From positions 248,001-312,000 of the forward strand of contig NW_013657661.1 in NCBI RefSeq assembly GCF_000142905.1: a stretch of 64,000 nt of DNA, in the 5' to 3' direction. Shown in pieces: positions 24,553 through 32,619 of the stretch. The translations under genes were made by a program, and so were the position numbers. The DNA comes from Thecamonas trahens ATCC 50062. Taxonomy: Eukaryota; Protista; Apusomonadida. How positions within the stretch are numbered: the first letter of the stretch is position 1; each line of letters begins with the position of its first letter. A model generated the notes under the pieces. The model saw only the letters and a program-made list of their open reading frames with translations, was not told where the DNA came from and did no database searches.

Positions 24553-24614
24553 TGTGAGAGAGAGAGAGAGAGAGAGAGGTAGCAACTAGCGGAGGGACAG
24601 TTCCCCCTACCACT

Positions 24615-24945
24615 ACGATCACCATCACCACCACCATCACCACACCACCATCACCATCACCACCACCATCACCACCACCATCACCACCACCACTACCACC
24701 ACCATCACCACCACCATCACCACCACCATCACCATCACCACCACCATCACCACCACATCACCATCACCACCACATCACCATCACCACCATCACCACCACC
24801 ATCACCACCACCATCACCATCACCACCACCATCACCACCACATCACCATCACCATCACCATCACCATCACCACCACCACCATCACCATCACCACCATCAC
24901 CACCACTATCACCACCACCACCACCACCACCACCACAATCACAAT
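24615..24945. repeat. (CAC/CAT)n trinucleotide microsatellite, ~330 bp
   Basis: Imperfect caccaccat array in the divergent intergenic region between the ZZ-SEC-C gene and the RBR gene. Confidence 0.95.
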
Positions 24946-25089
24946 CACCTTCCGCCCCTCCCCCCGCCCCCGCCCCCCCCTGCCCCCCCTTCCTCGGCTC
25001 CTCCCAAACCGGCAGTCTCAACCTCTCCCCTCCCCCGCCCCCACCCCACACGCACACACACTCCACCCCACTCACCCCACCCGCCCGCC

Positions 25090-28000
25090 ATGCCCTCCCG
25101 GCCCCTACACACGACAGCATGCCTGTCACTGCTGCTGCTGGCGGCGCTGGTAGCCTTGCCTGTCCAGGCTAGGGTAGGCGCCCAGTTCAAGGAGGCCTAC
25201 ACGGCGGTGCCTGGCTCCTGCACCAGCGACACCCACTGCGGCCTGTACTCGTTCTGCAACGACGACGGCATCTGCGAGAGCTCACTGACACAGGGCCGCA
25301 TTCTCGGCGGCATCATGCCCACGGCTACCGTCGTCGTTGTCGCCATCTTTGGCGCTTGCGCCGCCGCCATCGCCTGCGGCTGCAGCTCGTACTGGGCCTC
25401 GCCAGGCGCCCGATGCGCTTCGCCCGGCGAGGCCGGCATCGAGCGCGCAGTCCTCTCTGCCCAGGCTGCCACCATCTGCTGCATTGTCACCGCTCTGGCC
25501 CTCGGCCTCACCCTCGGGCTCTGGTCGGCCGACGTAACTCCGTCTGCGCCAGGCGCAGGCCGCAACTGCACCTCGCTACAGGCTCTGGCCTGCGAGCCCT
25601 ACTTTTGCGATCTCCGTGTCGAGCAGTGCTTCACCGCATGCTCCACCCAAGCGCACTGCTCGCTTGGCGCAGAGTGCAAGGCCGGCGTCTGCGTCTCCAC
25701 CCGCACCAATCTACCGTCCAACTCGGAGGGGCAGTCCCAGCCCAAGAACCCGGCCGGCCGCGTCGCCGCCATCGCCATCTTCTCCGCCCTCGGCTGGTTC
25801 TGCCTCTGCTCGGTCAGCGCCTTGTTTTGGAACATCAACGCCAACAAGTCCGACTACGATTGGTACTTTTGGTCCAAGTGCTGCGCCACAACAGGATGCA
25901 TCGCCATTGCTCTTGGTCTTGGCCTAGGCCTCGGCCTCCCACGCGCCACCATCGTACCTATCATGCCGGCCATCAACTCTACCACATGCGCTGGCGACCG
26001 CGCCTGTGCCCCGTACCTATGCAACGAGGACATCGGCGCGTGCTACGATGCCTGCGCCACCTCGGACGACTGCTTCACCTCGTTCTCGTGCTCGGCCGGC
26101 AAGTGTGTCCCCGGCTTTGCCGGCGTCGAAGTCCGCTCCGTCTCGGTCGGCGGCACTGTCGCCATCGTTGCCGCCATCGCCGTCTTTATCTGCTGCTGCT
26201 TCTCGTGCTTCTTTTACAAGTGCGACCCGTGCAGCGTGTACAACCAAGAGGAGCGCATGGTCGGCGGCCTCTTCTGCGCTCTCCTCTTCACCATTGTTGT
26301 TGTCGTCGTTGCCGGCCCGCTTATTGGCCTTGCCAAGCACGACGTCGAGTTTGCTCATCCCGCGCCACTCAATGGCACCGCTCACTGCGCGCAGGCCGAC
26401 GCTCTCGCCTGTGCGCCCTACTACTGCGACCTCACCTCGTCCAAGTGCCGTGCCTCGTGTGCTGCCGACGACGAGTGCATCACCGGCGCAAAGTGTTCCA
26501 AGTCAGGTGAGTGCGTGTACGACGGCCCGTCGCGAGAGTCCATGCTAGACTCGAAGCGCCGTACTCTTCCGGCGTGGGCCACCACCATCATCGCCCTCGT
26601 CAGTCCGCTCCCGCTTGTAGTCCTACTCCTCGGCGTCTTTATTCTCTTCACCGTCTTTAGGAACACCCGGTACGTCGTCGATCACGAGTACGACCTGGCT
26701 CCAGCCTCGTGTAATGGCGCCATTCTCTGCTGTGTCATCATTGCCCTCACTGTCGGCCTCGCCCTCGGCCTCACCCAGGTCGCCGGCAGTCCGTCGCCGC
26801 ACGCCGGAACCGTCACCCCGCATCTTGCCCCGGCCTTTCCTACATGGTTTGTCGTCACTGTCACCATGGCGGCCGCATGCGGCTCGTGCGGGCTTGTCCT
26901 TGTCATCGCGCGCTGCACCCTGTCGCTTCCGTGGCGAGCCGGCGTCATGTCCCTCGTAGAGTCCGACTCCCACACCGCTAAGGCCTTCTCCGCCTTTTGC
27001 TACCTTGTCATTACTTTTGCCGTTGTCATGACTGCTGTCGGCGTCGGGATGGGGACCCAGACCAAGCTCGTTGTTCCCGCCGCGCCTGGTGCTGTCAACG
27101 GCACGTCGTGCGTGACAGCCACCGACCCGCGGTGCTTCCCCTTCCGCTGCGACGTCTATGCCGGGACATGCTACGACTCGTGCACCACGTCTGAAGAGTG
27201 CATCGATGGCCAGCAGTGCCGCGCGGGCCAGTGCGCCACACCACCGTACAGCGGTCTCCTGCGCCCGCGCAGACTCAGCGCCGTCGTCGTCGCCGGCGCG
27301 GTTCTCCTCGCCTTCTCGCTATGCTTTATCTGCATCTCGTCGACCGCCGGCTGGCGGCCGCGCGCCCGACTCTGGCTCTCGGGCTTCCAGCGGTACCGGG
27401 TCCCGCTCATCAGCGTCACCTCGTGCTGCTGCGCCGTATTCGTGGGCGTCGTCGTCGCCATGCTGCTCCTCATGTGGAGCCGGGTCGACGATGTCGCACC
27501 GGTGGCCGCCACCGGTGCCGGCGCGCGGACCTGTCACCACATCGCTGACCTCGCGTGCGCGCCGTACCTGTGCGACTCGATCACTTCGAGCTGCTACAAT
27601 GTCTGCTCGTCTGACCGGCACTGTCAGGACTACTACGAGTGCGACAAAGCGGCCGGAAAGTGTGTGTATGCCTCGCGAGACTGGGCCCGCTTTATCGGCA
27701 ACATCCTCATTGCCGTCCTAGCCACCGGCCTGGTCCTTGGCATGGCCTCGTTCCGACTCGATCACTTGTACACCGCCCGCAAGATGAAGGCTGCGCTTCG
27801 CCGCCGCGAAGAGTTCCTCCGCCGGCTGCAAGAGTTCAAGGCCCAGCAAGCCGCCATCGAACCGGTTGTTCTTGACGTCGACACTCCAGTCGGTGAGGAT
27901 GGCCCGGACCCGACGCTGCCCACACCTGCCGGGGCAAGCGCCGGGGAAGGCGCCGCCTTTGACTTTGAAGGTGCCGAGCCCGTCGACATGGATGCACTGG

Positions 28001-30303
28001 CGGCTGCCGGTACAGCCGCGCCTGCGCCGCACACCTCGGATGTTTGCGGCATCTGCTACTTTGCCCCGTCAACTGTCCGCTTTGTCCGCAAAAACTGCAC
28101 CCATGGCTTCTGCAACGAGTGCGCGGCGTCGTCGCTGCAGATGATCATCGACACTGACCAGTTCCCGGCCCGCTGCCCAGGCTGCCTCGCCGAAGACATG
28201 GGCCTGGCGCCGGACGATCCCATGTTCCAAGCCTCGCTCATCGAGTCAGGTATCATCGAGCGGCTCGCCCGCCGTATGGTCATCGCCATCGACTTTGCCC
28301 GTCGCTTCATCTCGCTCCAGCTGATGAAGGCGTTTGCCTCGGACGACATCGTCATGTGCCCGGCGTGCTCGCTCCTCAACATCAAGCCCGACTGGGAAGC
28401 GGTGACCAAGTCGGCTCCGAATCGGTACGTGGTCACCTGCCCTAACTGCACCTCGGAGTTTTGCGCCGAGTGCCTTGGATTCTCGTTTGAGCACGACGGC
28501 TACACCTGCGAAGAGTACGCCCGCGCCATGGAGCGCGGTGACGACCGCCAGACCCAGGCTTTTATTGCGTCGACGTCCAAGCCGTGCCCATCGTGCGGTG
28601 TGCCGACGTCGCGGTGGCGCGGCCACGCCTGCCACCACATCACGCCTGGAACCGGGTGCGTCAACTGTGGCCATCACTACTGCATCGTGTGCCTCCAGCC
28701 GCATCCATGCGGCGGCTCAGACCACGGCCTCTTCTGCGACGACCGCTGCGACTGCCTCCCGTGTCCCGACTGCAGACCCGGCTCGCCATGTGCCCACTGC
28801 TACGGCGACGAGTCGTGCCCGTCGTGCCATCCGCCCCGCACCGCCGACGCGATGCGGAATCATGGCTTCACGCCCAACGACATAATCGGCGGCTTTGGCC
28901 TGCAGGACATGGGTAACGTACCGCTGCAGCCCATTCCACGCCCGCCGTCGCCGCCGCCGATGCCGCACGAGCCGGGCCATGCCCTCGACGATCTGCTCGG
29001 CGACCTCGGCCTTGACTACGTCCCTCCCGGCTTCTGGGACCCCGTCATTCCGCTCGCGCCATCATCGCCGGGCGATGTCGCCGGGCCGTCGGGCGCCGCT
29101 GGGCCGTCGGCGCCGCTGCCGCTGGCCGCACAGCGCGATACGCTCCTGCCGCCGCGCCGCCTTGTTATTCCCGAGGCCGGCGCTGGCATGACGCTCCACG
29201 ACCACATCCGCCTCATATCCGAGAACGGGCCGGATCGGCTGCCGCCTGCACCGCCACCGCTCCCGCCACCGGACTGGCGCCGCTCGTGGCGCAACGCAAC
29301 CTCGCACATCACCGCCCGCTCGCCCGAAGTAGTTCCGGTCCCAGCCGCAACCAGACTCGCCCCGCGCCGGCTTTCGGACGCTGACGTGCACTCTACATCG
29401 CGCAGCGCAAGCTCCGCTTCCGACGACGGCATCCAGCTCGAGCCTGTTCGGCCGCGGCCGTCGCGGCTCCAGCTCCCGACCCGAGGCCCGGCCACCGACG
29501 GCCATACGCCCGAGTCGGCCAACGATCGCGCATCGCCGCTCTACCTCCGCCGCGGGCTCAACCGGCTCGAGCTCACCCCCGAGGCCGTGACCAGCGCCTC
29601 ATCAGCAGGCGTCGACGACAACGCAGCCAACGTCTTTGACTTTTCCGCCTTTCCACGCACTGCTCGCGAGAATCTGGCACCGGTCACCTCGCGCTGGCTC
29701 TCGCCGCTCTCCGCCAGCCGGGCCCACCCGGCAACCGCATCACGGCGGCCACTCTCCAGCGAGTTCTTCCGCTTTGACGCGCCGCAGTCGGGCGGCGGCC
29801 GCGCCCTGCACTCCGCTGACGGGTCGACCCTTCCGCCTGTAGTGCGAACGCCGGCCTCGGCCCAGCGCCCGCGCATCGCCCAGTTTATGGCCATCACCGG
29901 TGTTGCTACCGAGCGCATCGCACGTAACTACCTCTCGCTCTTCAACTTTGACCTCGCCAGCGCCGTCCACTACCACAACGATGTCGAGGCCACGCTGCAA
30001 GCTCGCAACTACAAGTCGACCGCGAGCAGCGAGTCTGCGTCTGAGGCTGCGCCACCGCCGCCACCGCCTCCTGTGCCTGCCCCTGAGGCTGCGCATCTCT
30101 CGCCGGCAAGTCCCCGCGATGACATTATCCACCATCACCCACTTCCAGACTCTGAAGGCTCGGACGAGAGCGAGCTGACATCGTCGGCGACTGAAACATC
30201 ATCGACGGCCTCGACCTCGTCGTCTGCTAGCTGTGACGGTCGCGCTGCGCCAACCACCTCCAGTCATGTCACCGTCTCGTCGTCTTCTGCTGATCTGGTG
30301 TGA
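25090..30303 (+). CDS. Multipass membrane protein with repeated extracellular Cys-rich modules fused to an RBR (RING1-IBR-RING2) E3 ubiquitin ligase and a UBA-like domain
   Basis: Uninterrupted 1737-aa ORF. Signal peptide, ~13 hydrophobic segments and five 8-Cys modules. RING1 CGIC...CTHGFCNEC...CPGC, IBR CPAC...CPNCTSEFCAEC...H...C, RING2 KPCPSC...HACHHI...CVNCGHHYCIVC. UBA-like IAQFMAITGV...ARNYLSLFNFDLASAVHYH. Confidence 0.88.
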   Translation: MPSRPLHTTACLSLLLLAALVALPVQARVGAQFKEAYTAVPGSCTSDTHCGLYSFCNDDGICESSLTQGRILGGIMPTATVVVVAIFGACAAAIACGCSSYWASPGARCASPGEAGIERAVLSAQAATICCIVTALALGLTLGLWSADVTPSAPGAGRNCTSLQALACEPYFCDLRVEQCFTACSTQAHCSLGAECKAGVCVSTRTNLPSNSEGQSQPKNPAGRVAAIAIFSALGWFCLCSVSALFWNINANKSDYDWYFWSKCCATTGCIAIALGLGLGLGLPRATIVPIMPAINSTTCAGDRACAPYLCNEDIGACYDACATSDDCFTSFSCSAGKCVPGFAGVEVRSVSVGGTVAIVAAIAVFICCCFSCFFYKCDPCSVYNQEERMVGGLFCALLFTIVVVVVAGPLIGLAKHDVEFAHPAPLNGTAHCAQADALACAPYYCDLTSSKCRASCAADDECITGAKCSKSGECVYDGPSRESMLDSKRRTLPAWATTIIALVSPLPLVVLLLGVFILFTVFRNTRYVVDHEYDLAPASCNGAILCCVIIALTVGLALGLTQVAGSPSPHAGTVTPHLAPAFPTWFVVTVTMAAACGSCGLVLVIARCTLSLPWRAGVMSLVESDSHTAKAFSAFCYLVITFAVVMTAVGVGMGTQTKLVVPAAPGAVNGTSCVTATDPRCFPFRCDVYAGTCYDSCTTSEECIDGQQCRAGQCATPPYSGLLRPRRLSAVVVAGAVLLAFSLCFICISSTAGWRPRARLWLSGFQRYRVPLISVTSCCCAVFVGVVVAMLLLMWSRVDDVAPVAATGAGARTCHHIADLACAPYLCDSITSSCYNVCSSDRHCQDYYECDKAAGKCVYASRDWARFIGNILIAVLATGLVLGMASFRLDHLYTARKMKAALRRREEFLRRLQEFKAQQAAIEPVVLDVDTPVGEDGPDPTLPTPAGASAGEGAAFDFEGAEPVDMDALAAAGTAAPAPHTSDVCGICYFAPSTVRFVRKNCTHGFCNECAASSLQMIIDTDQFPARCPGCLAEDMGLAPDDPMFQASLIESGIIERLARRMVIAIDFARRFISLQLMKAFASDDIVMCPACSLLNIKPDWEAVTKSAPNRYVVTCPNCTSEFCAECLGFSFEHDGYTCEEYARAMERGDDRQTQAFIASTSKPCPSCGVPTSRWRGHACHHITPGTGCVNCGHHYCIVCLQPHPCGGSDHGLFCDDRCDCLPCPDCRPGSPCAHCYGDESCPSCHPPRTADAMRNHGFTPNDIIGGFGLQDMGNVPLQPIPRPPSPPPMPHEPGHALDDLLGDLGLDYVPPGFWDPVIPLAPSSPGDVAGPSGAAGPSAPLPLAAQRDTLLPPRRLVIPEAGAGMTLHDHIRLISENGPDRLPPAPPPLPPPDWRRSWRNATSHITARSPEVVPVPAATRLAPRRLSDADVHSTSRSASSASDDGIQLEPVRPRPSRLQLPTRGPATDGHTPESANDRASPLYLRRGLNRLELTPEAVTSASSAGVDDNAANVFDFSAFPRTARENLAPVTSRWLSPLSASRAHPATASRRPLSSEFFRFDAPQSGGGRALHSADGSTLPPVVRTPASAQRPRIAQFMAITGVATERIARNYLSLFNFDLASAVHYHNDVEATLQARNYKSTASSESASEAAPPPPPPPVPAPEAAHLSPASPRDDIIHHHPLPDSEGSDESELTSSATETSSTASTSSSASCDGRAAPTTSSHVTVSSSSADLV

Positions 30304-30390: not shown

Positions 30391-32619
30391 ATGAACTCGT
30401 CCGAGTCTGGGTCGGAGGCTCACTGGTGGGAGAGCGACTCCGAGTCGGGCTCGGCTGAGGAGCATGTGCCTCGGCCCGAGTCTGCCCTCCAGCTCTGCCT
30501 TACCCTCCATGCCCACGGCCTGGCCTTTCGAGTCCGCGAAGCCCTCAAGAGCCGGGCGGAGCGTGGTGGGAGTGGCAGGAGTGGCAGCAAGGATGTCGGC
30601 CGAAGCGCGCGTGCGAGGATGGCGGCCGTGGGCGAGGCGACGGCCCAGGTGCTACGTGGGCTGGGCCTGGAGGCCAAAGTCGAGGTGGAGGATGGTGAAG
30701 CCGAGTGTGAAGCCCGCGGGCGCGCCGACGCGCTGATGCGCGCGCGTCAGGGTGTGGCCTACGTCTTGGTCGGCCCATCGTCACGCAAGGCGCTGGAGGA
30801 TGCTTTTGCCGCTGCACAAGTGGGCGCCGCCGAGGCTGTCCGCATCTTAACGCTCTGCGGCTCGGCCCGGGTCCAGCAGATGGTGCTGGCGGTGGTACGA
30901 TCGGCGCGGACGTCAGCAGCGCTGGCAGAGACCATGAGCAACGCGATTAGAGCCGGCGATGGGGAGGCAGACGCCACCGATGCCACCCTCAACGAGCTGG
31001 TCGACCTGCCGCTAATCGGTGCTCTCGAGAGCACCGGCCTCCTCGCCGACGTCTGCGCCCTCCATGACAAGGCATCCCAGGCTGAGCTCTTCGACGCACT
31101 GGCGTCATTCAAGCTCACGCTCAGCCTAGGCGCACTCCCGCTTGACGCCATCAACAACTACTTTGGCTCTGAGATTGCTTTCTACTTTGCTTGGCTCCAC
31201 ATGTACACGGTGTATCTGGTTGCACCTGCGCTCTTGGGCTTGCTTGTCTTTGTCCATCAGTGGCTCGCCGACGCCTCGTTTGTGTGGCCGCTCATCCCCT
31301 ACGGTATCTGCCTCTCGCTCTGGTCGTCGGTCTTTCTACAGATGTGGCGGCGGCGGCAGTCGGCCATGGCCTACAAGTGGCTCGATGGCGAACTGGAGCT
31401 GCCGGCCACCCGGTGGGAGCACCGACCAGGCTTTGAGGGCGAGTGGATTCGCCACGAGCCGAGTGGCCTCTACGTCCTGCAGTATCCGACGTACATCCGG
31501 TATGCCAAGTATGCGGCGTCGGCGGTGGTCCTATTCCTGTTTGTGGCTGTGGTGGCCGGCTCGATCTGGGGTGTGCAAGAGCTGACGCGGACGCTCGAGG
31601 CCGAGTACCCGGCGTGCTACGATTGGGGCCACATCAAGGCCTCGCTCCTCGGCAACGAGTCGCCACCGCACGTGACCGCCGAAGCATTGTGGTGGTGCCA
31701 GGTCATCCGCATCGTGCCTGGCCTTGTCTCTGCCGTCGCCATCCAAGTCCTCTCGCGGGTATACACGGTCGTGGCCCGGCGCATCAACGCGTGGGAGAAC
31801 TACAAGTCGGAAACCTCGGCCCGCAACCACCTCCTCGCCAAGCTCTTTGTGTTTCAATTTGTCAACCACTTTGCTGCACTCTTCTACCTGGCCTTCTATC
31901 TGCGGGACTGGGACAAGCTCCGCCAGCGGTTGCTGGTAGTCCTTGTCTTCAACCAAGTGCTGGACAACTTCAAGGAGACGCTCGCTCCGGCGGTCATCAC
32001 GCTCCTTCGGGCATCCGTTCCGCTGGCGGCGGCTCCGGTTGCCCGCGACTCGCCTCACGCCGAGCTCATCGACCAGACCAACCGTCCTCGGTATGATGAC
32101 ACCATCTCAGACTTTCTGGAGATGCTCATTCAAACGGCGTATGTCACGTTCTTTGGCGCAGCCTTTCCGCTCGCCGCCGTCCTCGCTCTCGCCAACAACC
32201 TGGCGGAGATCCGAGTTGACGCACACAAGCTCTGCTCGCCGGGTGGGTACGCACGACCGTTTGCCCGTGCTGCGGCTGGCATTGGCGTCTGGTTGTACCT
32301 GCTTGACTTTATTTCGATTGTCGGTGTTCTCGTCAACACGGCCCTGCTAGTCATGACAACCAACTCGATCGACGAGTGGTGCGCGCGGTACGGATGGCCC
32401 GAAATGCTTGGCGTCTCGGCCGCGGTGCTCAAGATTGGTGGCGTCTTTGTGGCGGAGCATGCCATCCTCGGCATCAAGCTCGCGCTGCACCTTCTCATTC
32501 CTCCTGTTCCAGGCACCGTCAAGTGGTCACGGATCATCGCCGCCACGCCCAAGGCGTACCTGCACGAAAAGTCGGGCCCGTACGCCCGATCAATGGTCCG
32601 CAAGGCCAAGATCGCGTGA
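30391..32619 (+). CDS. Anoctamin/TMEM16 family (ANO10/TMEM16K-like) scramblase/channel
   Basis: PLDAINNYFGSEIAFYFAWL, WENYK, KLFVFQFVNHF..LFYLAF, DFLEMLIQTAYVTFFGAAFPLA, NNLAEIRVDAHKL. Confidence 0.93.
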   Translation: MNSSESGSEAHWWESDSESGSAEEHVPRPESALQLCLTLHAHGLAFRVREALKSRAERGGSGRSGSKDVGRSARARMAAVGEATAQVLRGLGLEAKVEVEDGEAECEARGRADALMRARQGVAYVLVGPSSRKALEDAFAAAQVGAAEAVRILTLCGSARVQQMVLAVVRSARTSAALAETMSNAIRAGDGEADATDATLNELVDLPLIGALESTGLLADVCALHDKASQAELFDALASFKLTLSLGALPLDAINNYFGSEIAFYFAWLHMYTVYLVAPALLGLLVFVHQWLADASFVWPLIPYGICLSLWSSVFLQMWRRRQSAMAYKWLDGELELPATRWEHRPGFEGEWIRHEPSGLYVLQYPTYIRYAKYAASAVVLFLFVAVVAGSIWGVQELTRTLEAEYPACYDWGHIKASLLGNESPPHVTAEALWWCQVIRIVPGLVSAVAIQVLSRVYTVVARRINAWENYKSETSARNHLLAKLFVFQFVNHFAALFYLAFYLRDWDKLRQRLLVVLVFNQVLDNFKETLAPAVITLLRASVPLAAAPVARDSPHAELIDQTNRPRYDDTISDFLEMLIQTAYVTFFGAAFPLAAVLALANNLAEIRVDAHKLCSPGGYARPFARAAAGIGVWLYLLDFISIVGVLVNTALLVMTTNSIDEWCARYGWPEMLGVSAAVLKIGGVFVAEHAILGIKLALHLLIPPVPGTVKWSRIIAATPKAYLHEKSGPYARSMVRKAKIA

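What the first reader, a model, noticed from the sequence alone, without database searches (positions are those of the whole stretch)
25090..30303. Receptor-like 13-TM protein with five repeated 8-Cys ectodomain modules fused to an RBR E3 ligase and a UBA-like domain
Seen in sequence: a signal peptide, a half Cys module, then a repeating unit of two TMs plus a Cys module. The five full modules share an 8-Cys pattern with a CxP[YF]xC core (e.g. CAGDRACAPYLCNEDIGACYDACATSDDCFTSFSCSAGKC), and four are preceded by N-glycosylation sequons (NCT, NST, NGT, NGT). I count 13 TMs. An odd number places all modules outside and the C-terminus in the cytosol, where RING1-IBR-RING2 (~28045-28710, putative catalytic Cys in HACHH), an extra Cys cluster and a UBA-like domain (~29870-29980) lie. 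Juxtamembrane CC/CCC clusters may be palmitoylated. Established knowledge: membrane-associated RBRs (RNF144, RNF19, RNF217) have one or two TMs and no large repeated ectodomain. Inference: this could be a cell-surface or endomembrane sensor that couples extracellular binding directly to ubiquitination. I do not know of a described protein with this architecture. The modules recall Cys-rich repeats of myxobacterial surface proteins (impression only).
Basis: partly seen in the sequence, partly recalled or inferred. Interest (0 to 1): 0.85.

Follow-up and report, generated by a model that had tools for sequence, protein, structure and literature searches.

The report
Multipass membrane RBR ubiquitin ligase family
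This Thecamonas trahens gene encodes a ubiquitin ligase anchored by 13 membrane helices that display five copies of a small bacterial-type cysteine-rich module on the outer face; relatives keep the same layout and no description of it was found, but what it does is untested.

Summary
Window 25090-30303 (+) is one 1737-aa ORF, Thecamonas trahens AMSG_04901, annotated as uncharacterized.

What the sequence shows:
- A signal peptide, a 4-Cys half module, 13 hydrophobic helices and five 8-Cys modules with all eight Cys invariant.
- A complete RING1-IBR-RING2. The family profile matches ARIH1 at E 6e-12, and C1181 aligns with the ARIH1 catalytic Cys.
- A conserved Cys-rich extension after RING2, and a UBA-like domain (Pfam UBA_4, above threshold).

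It is one gene, not a fusion artefact. T. trahens has four paralogs with the same layout. Full-length relatives 33-38% identical occur in a Tara Oceans metagenome and in one other sequencing run. Every copy has an odd helix count (11 or 13). Half the modules carry an N-glycosylation sequon just before their first Cys.

The module is not lineage-specific. Its profile hits 1913 representative proteins, mostly lipoproteins and surface proteins of Myxococcota-type bacteria.

The best reading is a polytopic RBR ligase with a cytosolic catalytic domain. Ligand sensing is only inferred. It is a new variant of a known kind. First readers flagged what appear to be paralogs elsewhere in this genome.

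The parts
25090..30303 (+). Whole gene: single 1737-aa ORF including stop (T. trahens AMSG_04901)
25090..25170 (+). Signal peptide (aa 1-27, hydrophobic core 9-27, ends VQA). The public model skips it through a predicted 28-nt intron at 25150-25177.
   Evidence: the full-length relatives P0002, P0009 and P0012 also begin with a signal-like segment
25189..25287 (+). N-terminal half module (4 Cys, matches the C-terminal half of the 8-Cys module)
   Evidence: at least three of the four paralogs also show it (the C46 match is insignificant, E 0.63)
25327..25521 (+). TM1 (aa 80-98) and TM2 (aa 126-144), with a short cytosolic loop between
25549..25704 (+). 8-Cys module 1 (aa 154-205), sequon NCT159
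25771..25938 (+). TM3 (aa 228-246) and TM4 (aa 265-283)
25966..26118 (+). 8-Cys module 2 (aa 293-343), sequon NST296
26158..26325 (+). TM5 (aa 357-375, ends in a CCC cluster) and TM6 (aa 394-412)
26365..26526 (+). 8-Cys module 3 (aa 426-479), sequon NGT428
26587..27039 (+). TM7-TM10 (aa 500-518, 543-561, 588-606, 632-650). The outer loop between TM8 and TM9 (aa 562-587) has no module, so this is a module-less repeat unit. P0002 has the same extra pair.
27088..27246 (+). 8-Cys module 4 (aa 667-719), sequon NGT670
27280..27471 (+). TM11 (aa 731-749) and TM12 (aa 776-794, starts with CCC). The loop between has 5 K/R and no D/E.
27511..27675 (+). 8-Cys module 5 (aa 808-862)
27691..27747 (+). TM13 (aa 868-886), followed by a juxtamembrane segment with 10 K/R in 40 aa
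28045..28185 (+). RING1 (C986-C1032, C3HC4)
28357..28509 (+). IBR (C1090-C1140, C6HC). Pfam IBR E 3.6e-4, below its cut-off.
28585..28692 (+). RING2 / Rcat (C1166-C1201). Putative catalytic Cys C1181 (nt 28630-28632) in GHACHH, with His at +2.
28708..28827 (+). Conserved Cys-rich extension after RING2 (nine Cys, C1207-C1246), probably a further zinc-binding element
   Evidence: Cys invariant in 6 sequences; also in soluble relatives; published analogy to the RING2 extensions of HOIP, RNF216 and HOIL-1
29875..29967 (+). UBA-like domain (Pfam UBA_4, aa 1596-1626)

Best explanation
The gene encodes a polytopic membrane-anchored RBR-type ubiquitin ligase and belongs to a small multigene family of Thecamonas-like protists.

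Shown or directly readable:
- A signal peptide and an odd number of helices (13 here, 11 in other family members).
- Five disulfide-type 8-Cys modules and the half module, all in the long loops.
- A complete RING1-IBR-RING2 with the Cys-x-His active-site motif, a conserved Cys-rich extension after RING2, and a UBA-like domain after the last helix.

Inferred topology: the modules face the lumen or the cell exterior and are N-glycosylated. The RBR and the UBA-like domain face the cytosol.

Inferred mechanism: RING1 binds a ubiquitin-charged E2. Ubiquitin passes to C1181 as a thioester and then to a substrate at that membrane. The post-RING2 extension probably helps position the acceptor, as the RING2 extensions of HOIP and RNF216 do. 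The UBA-like domain probably binds ubiquitin or a ubiquitin-like protein, or regulates the RBR.

Most speculative step: the knottin/Dickkopf-like modules bind an outside partner, and clustering or a conformational change relieves the autoinhibition usual in RBRs.
For: One gene:
- Continuous ORF.
- Four T. trahens paralogs repeat the layout of half module, five modules, RBR and, in at least three of them, a UBA-like domain.
- Full-length relatives as single called ORFs: P0009 and P0012 in Tara metagenome ERR868368, and P0002 in SRR30952584. They are 38%, 35% and 33% identical to the C50 paralog, the C46 paralog and the window protein.

RBR:
- The single sequence matches RNF216, ARIH1 and parkin.
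- The family profile matches ARIH1 across RING1-IBR-RING2 at E 5.8e-12, ARIH2 at 1e-10 and RNF216 at 4e-9. The ARIH1 residue at chain position 357, its catalytic Cys by my knowledge, aligns with C1181.
- All zinc ligands and the C-H-H motif are invariant in six sequences.

UBA_4: above the Pfam cut-off here, and E 1.5e-9 to 1.6e-10 in relatives.

Topology:
- Signal peptide, and an odd helix count in all six full-length proteins analysed.
- Eight Cys in every long loop that carries a module; short loops hold 0-4.
- 6-10 K/R in the 40 residues after the last helix.
- A sequon just before the first Cys in 12 of 24 family modules, against 16 of 348 non-family modules.

Module fold: AlphaFold pLDDT 91. 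The weak best Foldseek matches are the Draxin and Dkk4 Cys-rich domains and knottins.
Against: - No activity, localisation, glycosylation or ligand data exist.
- There is no transcript spanning the gene. Read laying gave only genomic-looking contigs plus a few exact 151-nt contigs from two metatranscriptomes.
- Topology rests on hydropathy and rules, not on a dedicated predictor.
- Pfam IBR is below its cut-off for the single sequence.
- The AlphaFold model of the RBR was poor, pLDDT 62.
- The module's fold matches are not significant (E 0.19; no VIA-align match).
- Nothing shows that the ectodomain regulates the ligase.
Confidence: 0.72

Rival explanations
1. It is a membrane-protein turnover or sorting ligase without ligand sensing. 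The polytopic part only anchors the RBR in an endomembrane or the plasma membrane, and perhaps recognises substrates within the bilayer, as the MARCH, Doa10 and HRD1 ligases do. The glycosylated Cys modules are structural or protective loops.
For: The helices are rich in small residues and Gly-x-Gly-type runs, which suit helix packing and intramembrane contacts. Known polytopic RING ligases work this way (review PMC4021871; also my knowledge). Nothing in the data requires a ligand.
Against: Five independently conserved modules, with all eight Cys invariant in 25 copies, persist through paralog and species divergence. That implies selection on the ectodomain itself. Related bacterial modules sit in surface and secreted repeat proteins.
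Confidence: 0.3
2. It is a gene-model artefact: two adjacent genes (a multipass Cys-loop membrane protein and a soluble RBR-UBA protein) read through as one ORF.
For: No spanning transcript was obtained. At two paralogous loci (C12, C21) the membrane half and the RBR half lie in different frames, and the public annotation splits the C12 locus so that AMSG_03164 is the membrane part only. Soluble proteins with the same RBR subtype exist.
Against: There is no stop between the halves in the window gene, in the C50 and C46 paralogs, or in the two full-length environmental relatives P0009 and P0012. P0002 is also continuous from the membrane part into the RBR but is cut in RING2 by the end of its contig. 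The linker after the last helix is conserved in character, K/R-rich. The C21 paralog is annotated as one protein spanning both parts (P0003).
Confidence: 0.03
3. It is a catalytically inactive RBR-like scaffold: a surface or adhesion protein whose cytosolic tail only binds ubiquitin-system components.
For: No biochemical data exist. The RING2 C-terminal part is unusual, and the single-sequence Pfam IBR hit is sub-threshold.
Against: All RING1, IBR and RING2 zinc ligands, the catalytic Cys and the His at +2 are invariant across paralogs 40-46% identical and in a 33% identical environmental relative. Such conservation is not expected of a dead enzyme.
Confidence: 0.05

Closest known systems
RBR E3 ligases (Ariadne/ARIH1-2, RNF216/TRIAD3, parkin)
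   Same: RING1-IBR-RING2 order and zinc-ligand spacing. The catalytic Cys followed by His at +2 aligns with the ARIH1 catalytic Cys. Like RNF216, HOIP and HOIL-1, it has an extra zinc-type element at the end of RING2.
   Different: It falls in no named subfamily: the best PDB match is only E 6e-12 with a profile. It belongs to a subtype marked by a G-H-A-C-H-H RING2 motif and a Cys-rich tail with a conserved C-D-C and C-P-x-C pattern. That subtype occurs in various unnamed protist proteins. The N-terminal 890 aa have no counterpart in those proteins.
Membrane-associated human RBRs RNF144A/B, RNF19A/B and RNF217
   Same: An RBR attached to hydrophobic membrane segments (PMC4021871).
   Different: Those proteins have one or two hydrophobic segments C-terminal to the RBR and no sizeable ectodomain (my knowledge). 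Here 13 helices and five Cys-rich ectoloops lie N-terminal to the RBR, with a signal peptide. No specific sequence affinity to them was seen.
Receptor-like and polytopic RING ligases (PA-TM-RING such as RNF13, ZNRF3 and RNF43; MARCH; Doa10; HRD1)
   Same: The functional analogy of a luminal or extracellular domain, or a polytopic anchor, joined to a cytosolic E3 domain.
   Different: The catalytic class differs (RING, with no thioester intermediate). There is no homology in the membrane or outer parts, and none has repeated TM-hairpin-plus-module units.
Cys-rich repeats of Myxococcota lipoproteins and surface proteins (Pfam DUF7107, Dickkopf_N and EB-like neighbourhood)
   Same: The same 8-Cys module with the C-x-P-[YF]-x-C[DN] core. 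Single bacterial modules score about 30-44 bits. The hits include lipobox proteins, MYXO-CTERM proteins and TIGR03382-family proteins.
   Different: In the bacterial proteins examined, the modules stand in tandem (about 47-aa spacing) or alternate with other domains in proteins with at most a few hydrophobic segments. They are never separated by TM hairpins and never joined to an RBR. Pfam models do not reach threshold on either set.

Membership tests
RBR (RING-between-RING) E3 ubiquitin ligases | N-terminal RING1 with C3HC4 cross-brace ligand pattern | tested here: met
   The pattern C986-x2-C-x13-C-x-H-x2-C-x2-C-x17-C-x2-C1032 is read. All eight ligands are present in the five T. trahens sequences; the environmental relative P0004 lacks the last Cys pair. 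The region aligns to ARIH1 RING1.
RBR (RING-between-RING) E3 ubiquitin ligases | Central IBR domain (C6HC) | tested here: met
   C1090, C1093, C1117, C1120, C1125, C1128, H1135, C1140. Pfam IBR E 3.6e-4, 21.0 bits against a 24.3 cut-off for this sequence alone. P0012 reaches 33.8 bits. The family profile aligns through the ARIH1 IBR.
RBR (RING-between-RING) E3 ubiquitin ligases | RING2/Rcat with a catalytic Cys (and usually His two residues on) | tested here: met
   C1166-x2-C-x11-C1181-H-H, then C1190-x2-C-x4-C-x2-C1201. C1181 aligns with ARIH1 chain position 357. Invariant in six sequences.
RBR (RING-between-RING) E3 ubiquitin ligases | Thioester-dependent ubiquitin transfer activity | not testable with these tools
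   Needs an in vitro E1/E2/ubiquitin assay, wild type against a C1181 mutant.
UBA-like domain (Pfam PF14555 UBA_4) | Score above Pfam's gathering threshold | tested here: met
   27.1 bits against 21.8, aa 1596-1626. Relatives score 23.8 to 41 bits. A PDB sequence search finds only the FAF2/ETEA UBA-like domain, at E 0.61.
RNF144 / RNF19 / RNF217-type membrane RBRs | One or two TM segments C-terminal to the RBR and no large ectodomain | tested here: not met
   All 13 helices are N-terminal to the RBR, and none follows it. About 400 aa of ectoloops. The features of these families are from my knowledge and from PMC4021871.
Pfam DUF7107 / Dickkopf_N / EB Cys-rich modules | Score above the family's gathering threshold | tested here: not met
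   Best DUF7107 hit E 0.062, 14.1 bits against a 24.6 cut-off; EB E 0.22. The relation is suggested only by the Atlas neighbours of a bacterial homolog and by a weak Foldseek match to Draxin and Dkk4.
Unnamed 8-Cys repeat of Myxococcota-type surface proteins | Significant profile match with the same eight Cys and the C-x-P-[YF]-x-C core | tested here: met
   1913 representatives at E <= 1e-3 and 254 at E <= 1e-10. The strict pattern occurs in 80 of 155 listed non-family proteins. Bacterial gene context for P0006. Names MYXO-CTERM and TIGR03382.
PA-TM-RING / ZNRF3-type receptor E3 ligases | Luminal PA domain, single TM, RING-H2 | tested here: not met
   There is no PA or RING-H2 hit in Pfam. 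The architecture differs, so the resemblance is functional only.

The most novel reading that the evidence does not exclude
A receptor-type RBR ligase. The five bacterial-type (Myxococcota-like) knottin/Dickkopf-like modules, held close to the membrane between TM hairpins, bind an external ligand such as a surface component of bacterial prey or substratum. Binding-induced clustering switches on the cytosolic RBR, so that outside recognition is converted directly into ubiquitination at the membrane, for example to drive uptake or receptor turnover in a bacterivorous gliding flagellate. The module may have entered the apusomonad lineage from bacteria.
Probability: 0.2. Interest if true: 0.85.

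Novelty: new variant of a known kind. Interest (0 to 1): 0.6.

Why it matters
RBR ligases are studied almost entirely as soluble enzymes or as tail-anchored ones. A conserved family with a large repeated ectodomain and 11-13 helices wired to an RBR would be a new way of placing, and possibly regulating, this catalytic class.

It also documents an 8-Cys module that no Pfam model reaches. The module is common in myxobacterial surface proteins and has been reused inside a eukaryotic multipass protein. That is a clear case for studying domain transfer or convergence between bacteria and a bacterivorous protist.

Practically, it corrects the public gene model's N-terminus. It also gives testable constructs: the cytosolic fragment with C1181, and single modules that AlphaFold models with high confidence.

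Tried and rejected
- The full-length word-based homolog search found only the protein itself, because low-complexity words filled the 8000-candidate limit. That blank is not evidence of absence; the region-restricted and profile searches did find relatives.
With bacterial P0006 it found nothing in reference genomes. The taxonomy of the bacterial hits therefore rests on Atlas neighbours and source names.
- The Atlas search with the window's N-terminal 903 aa could not run because the machine was busy.
- NCBIfam finds nothing for the membrane part.
- Read laying: the runs of the organism itself look like genomic contigs. One contig runs colinear from 27794 to the end of the laid stretch (30450), past the stop at 30303, and carries 2966 further letters beyond it. 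The runs therefore cannot show a transcript or test the annotated 28-nt intron. Joints reported in the metatranscriptomes have short sides (21 nt) and come from GC-rich repeats, so I discarded them.
- The AlphaFold model of the RBR with only six sequences was poor (pLDDT 62; extension below 50). I did not use it for fold search.
- VIA-align found no match for the 52-aa module.
- I considered the RNF144/RNF19/RNF217 subfamilies and rejected them on architecture.
- I considered a dead enzyme and rejected it on conservation of the catalytic residues.
Full report
**What is there**

The window is GC-rich (about 64%) eukaryotic DNA carrying long uninterrupted ORFs on both strands. The finding's ORF, 25090-30303 (+), encodes 1737 aa. 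It is identical, apart from the first residues, to Thecamonas trahens ATCC 50062 AMSG_04901, which sources name 'uncharacterized protein' or 'RING-type domain-containing protein'.

The public model starts at an ATG at 25119 in another frame. It splices out 28 nt (25150-25177), which replaces the signal peptide with ten residues. Every full-length relative begins with a signal-like hydrophobic segment. I therefore take the ATG at 25090 as the start.

**Membrane part**

Hydropathy scanning gives a signal segment (aa 9-27, ending VQA) and 13 helices. The long loops carry five 8-Cys modules, and a 4-Cys half module follows the signal peptide. The repeating unit is two helices plus a module. One unit (TM7-TM10 region) has lost its module.

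In an alignment of 25 modules (24 from five T. trahens genes, one from a sixth protein) all eight Cys are invariant. The core is C-x-P-[YF]-x-C-[DN].

Several features fit a lumen or exterior position for the modules and a cytosolic C-terminus:
- The short loops are poor in Cys, and some are rich in K/R.
- The 40 residues after TM13 hold 10 K/R.
- The CC/CCC clusters all lie at predicted cytosolic helix ends. This is compatible with palmitoylation, which is untested.
- Twelve of the 24 family modules have an N-x-[ST] sequon within a few residues before their first Cys. The figure is 16 of 348 for modules of non-family, mostly bacterial, proteins, and there are only 3 sequons in the 851 cytosolic residues of this protein.

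**Cytosolic part**

The zinc-ligand spacing of RING1 (C3HC4), IBR (C6HC) and RING2 can be read directly from the sequence. The single sequence matches RNF216, ARIH1 and parkin in the PDB at E 1e-4 to 2e-3.

A profile of six family sequences matches ARIH1 over the whole RING1-IBR-RING2 at E 5.8e-12, ARIH2 at 1e-10 and RNF216 at 4e-9. In that alignment C1181 (in G-H-A-C-H-H) pairs with ARIH1 chain position 357, which I know as its catalytic Cys. A His stands two residues on, as in the Cys-His-Glu/Gln triad described for many RBRs (PMC9834252).

A block of nine further Cys (aa 1207-1246) follows. It is invariant in the family and also occurs in soluble environmental relatives. Published work shows that zinc-finger additions at the end of RING2 in HOIP and RNF216 bind the acceptor and set specificity. 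I infer a similar role here.

A UBA_4 domain (aa 1596-1626) passes Pfam's threshold. In relatives it scores up to E 1.6e-10 and usually sits at the extreme C-terminus. The stretch between the RBR and the UBA-like domain is Pro/Ser-rich and probably disordered.

**One gene, and a family**

A profile made only from the window's modules finds four more loci in the T. trahens genome, on contigs C50, C46, C12 and C21. Each has a half module (the C46 match is not significant), five modules separated by helix pairs, an RBR and, except where the C12 ORF breaks off, a UBA-like domain. Public models exist for three of them: AMSG_09394, AMSG_04998 and the partial AMSG_03164.

Relatives from other organisms keep the whole layout as single called ORFs:
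- P0009 (1489 aa) and P0012 (1333 aa, 7 near-identical members) come from the Tara Oceans protist-fraction assembly of ERR868368.
- P0002 (1172 aa, cut by the contig end) comes from SRR30952584.
- Their best matches are the C50 paralog (38%), the C46 paralog (35%) and the window protein (33% over 1173 aa). The paralogs therefore separated before these species did.
- The Tara contig has 63% GC, and its neighbouring gene is 60% identical to a T. trahens gene. This points to a Thecamonas-like organism.

Helix counts are 13 (window protein, P0002) or 11 (the C50 and C46 paralogs and their closest relatives), so they are always odd. These facts make a two-gene artefact very unlikely. They also show long-term selection on both halves together.

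**RNA evidence is thin**

Two metatranscriptomes hold exact 151-nt contigs over 25388-25535 and several places between 28760 and 29890. DNA carry-over cannot be excluded. The organism's own runs look genomic.

**The module**

No Pfam or NCBIfam model reaches threshold on it; the best is DUF7107 at E 0.06.

Searching 1.84 billion representative proteins with the 25-module profile gave 1913 hits at E <= 1e-3 and 254 at E <= 1e-10. Among the 150 best, only ten have modules separated by helices. These are the family itself plus the environmental fragments P0064, P0092 and P0127. In most of the other listed proteins the modules stand in tandem or alternate with other domains, with at most a few hydrophobic segments.

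The non-family hits I examined are bacterial:
- Many start with lipoprotein-type signals.
- P0006 sits among TetR, LysR and integrase genes.
- Its Atlas neighbours are Myxococcota proteins labelled DUF7107, Dickkopf_N or EB.
- Source names include MYXO-CTERM and TIGR03382.
- Pfam also fails on these bacterial proteins.

A sixth T. trahens protein, on contig C22, joins DUF4215 repeats, one module and one helix. By my knowledge DUF4215 is the Myxococcus Cys-rich repeat.

AlphaFold models the module confidently (pLDDT 91). The weak top Foldseek hits are the Draxin and Dkk4 Cys-rich domains and knottins (E 0.19 and worse), and VIA-align finds no match.

**Interpretation**

The supported core is a polytopic RBR E3 ligase with glycosylated Cys-rich ectoloops and a cytosolic catalytic and UBA-like region. 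How it is used is inferred.

RBRs are generally autoinhibited and are switched on by partners or by ubiquitin species (PMC9834252). Ectodomain-driven clustering is therefore a reasonable activation route. An anchoring-only role in membrane-protein turnover fits the data about as well.

**Comparison with known proteins, and novelty**

Human membrane-associated RBRs are listed as having hydrophobic regions (PMC4021871). By my knowledge those regions lie C-terminal to the RBR, and the proteins lack ectodomains. Receptor-like RING ligases (PA-TM-RING, ZNRF3/RNF43) are functional analogues only.

Literature searches for RBRs in Thecamonas or apusomonads, and for transmembrane RBRs, found no description of this layout. 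These searches cover open-access texts only.

I rate it a new variant of a known kind.

**Earlier notes of this scan**

First readers of other windows of this genome independently noted what appear to be three paralogs. I found the paralogous loci by search before seeing those notes.

Read laying was given 5501 letters.

Noticed in passing
window 24610-25085: About 330 nt of imperfect (CACCAT/CACCAC)n microsatellite, then a C-rich tract, lie directly upstream of the start codon.
   Followed up: no
window 25119-25177: The public model AMSG_04901 starts at an out-of-frame ATG (25119) and removes a 28-nt GT..AG 'intron' (25150-25177), losing the signal peptide. Relatives argue that the unspliced ATG at 25090 is right.
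   Followed up: partly
L025:3875-5494 (G000 contig C22): A 540-aa T. trahens protein has DUF4215 repeats (E 4e-15), one copy of the same 8-Cys module and a single helix. It is a second, simpler host of the bacterial-type module.
   Followed up: partly
P0004 (L026:452-3736), P0005, P0169-P0174, P0178: An unnamed RBR subtype is marked by a G-H-A-C-H-H RING2 motif plus a Cys-rich tail. It occurs in other architectures: small soluble proteins, an N-terminally anchored form, and ankyrin fusions. P0178 (Aureococcus anophagefferens, ankyrin repeats) matched the RBR profile at E 2.3e-7, but its sequence was not inspected for the motif.
   Followed up: partly
L023:3154-7705 and L024:3411-7756: At the paralogous loci on C12 and C21 the membrane half and the RBR half lie in different frames that overlap. 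This could be an intron or a frameshift. The public annotation splits C12 (AMSG_03164 is the membrane part only) and truncates the N-terminus of C21.
   Followed up: no
window 28398 and 28429: Contigs of two runs of the same organism read G for A at 28398 and A for G at 28429, relative to the assembly. These may be strain or allele differences, or assembly errors, inside the IBR region.
   Followed up: no
window 25388-25535, 28760-29158, 29740-29890: Exact 151-nt matches to this T. trahens gene occur in a subsurface metatranscriptome and a seawater metatranscriptome. The cause may be environmental presence of the species, carry-over, or DNA in the libraries.
   Followed up: no
window 30391-32619: An anoctamin/TMEM16 gene (Pfam E 6e-97) starts only 88 nt after the stop codon, on the same strand.
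   Followed up: no
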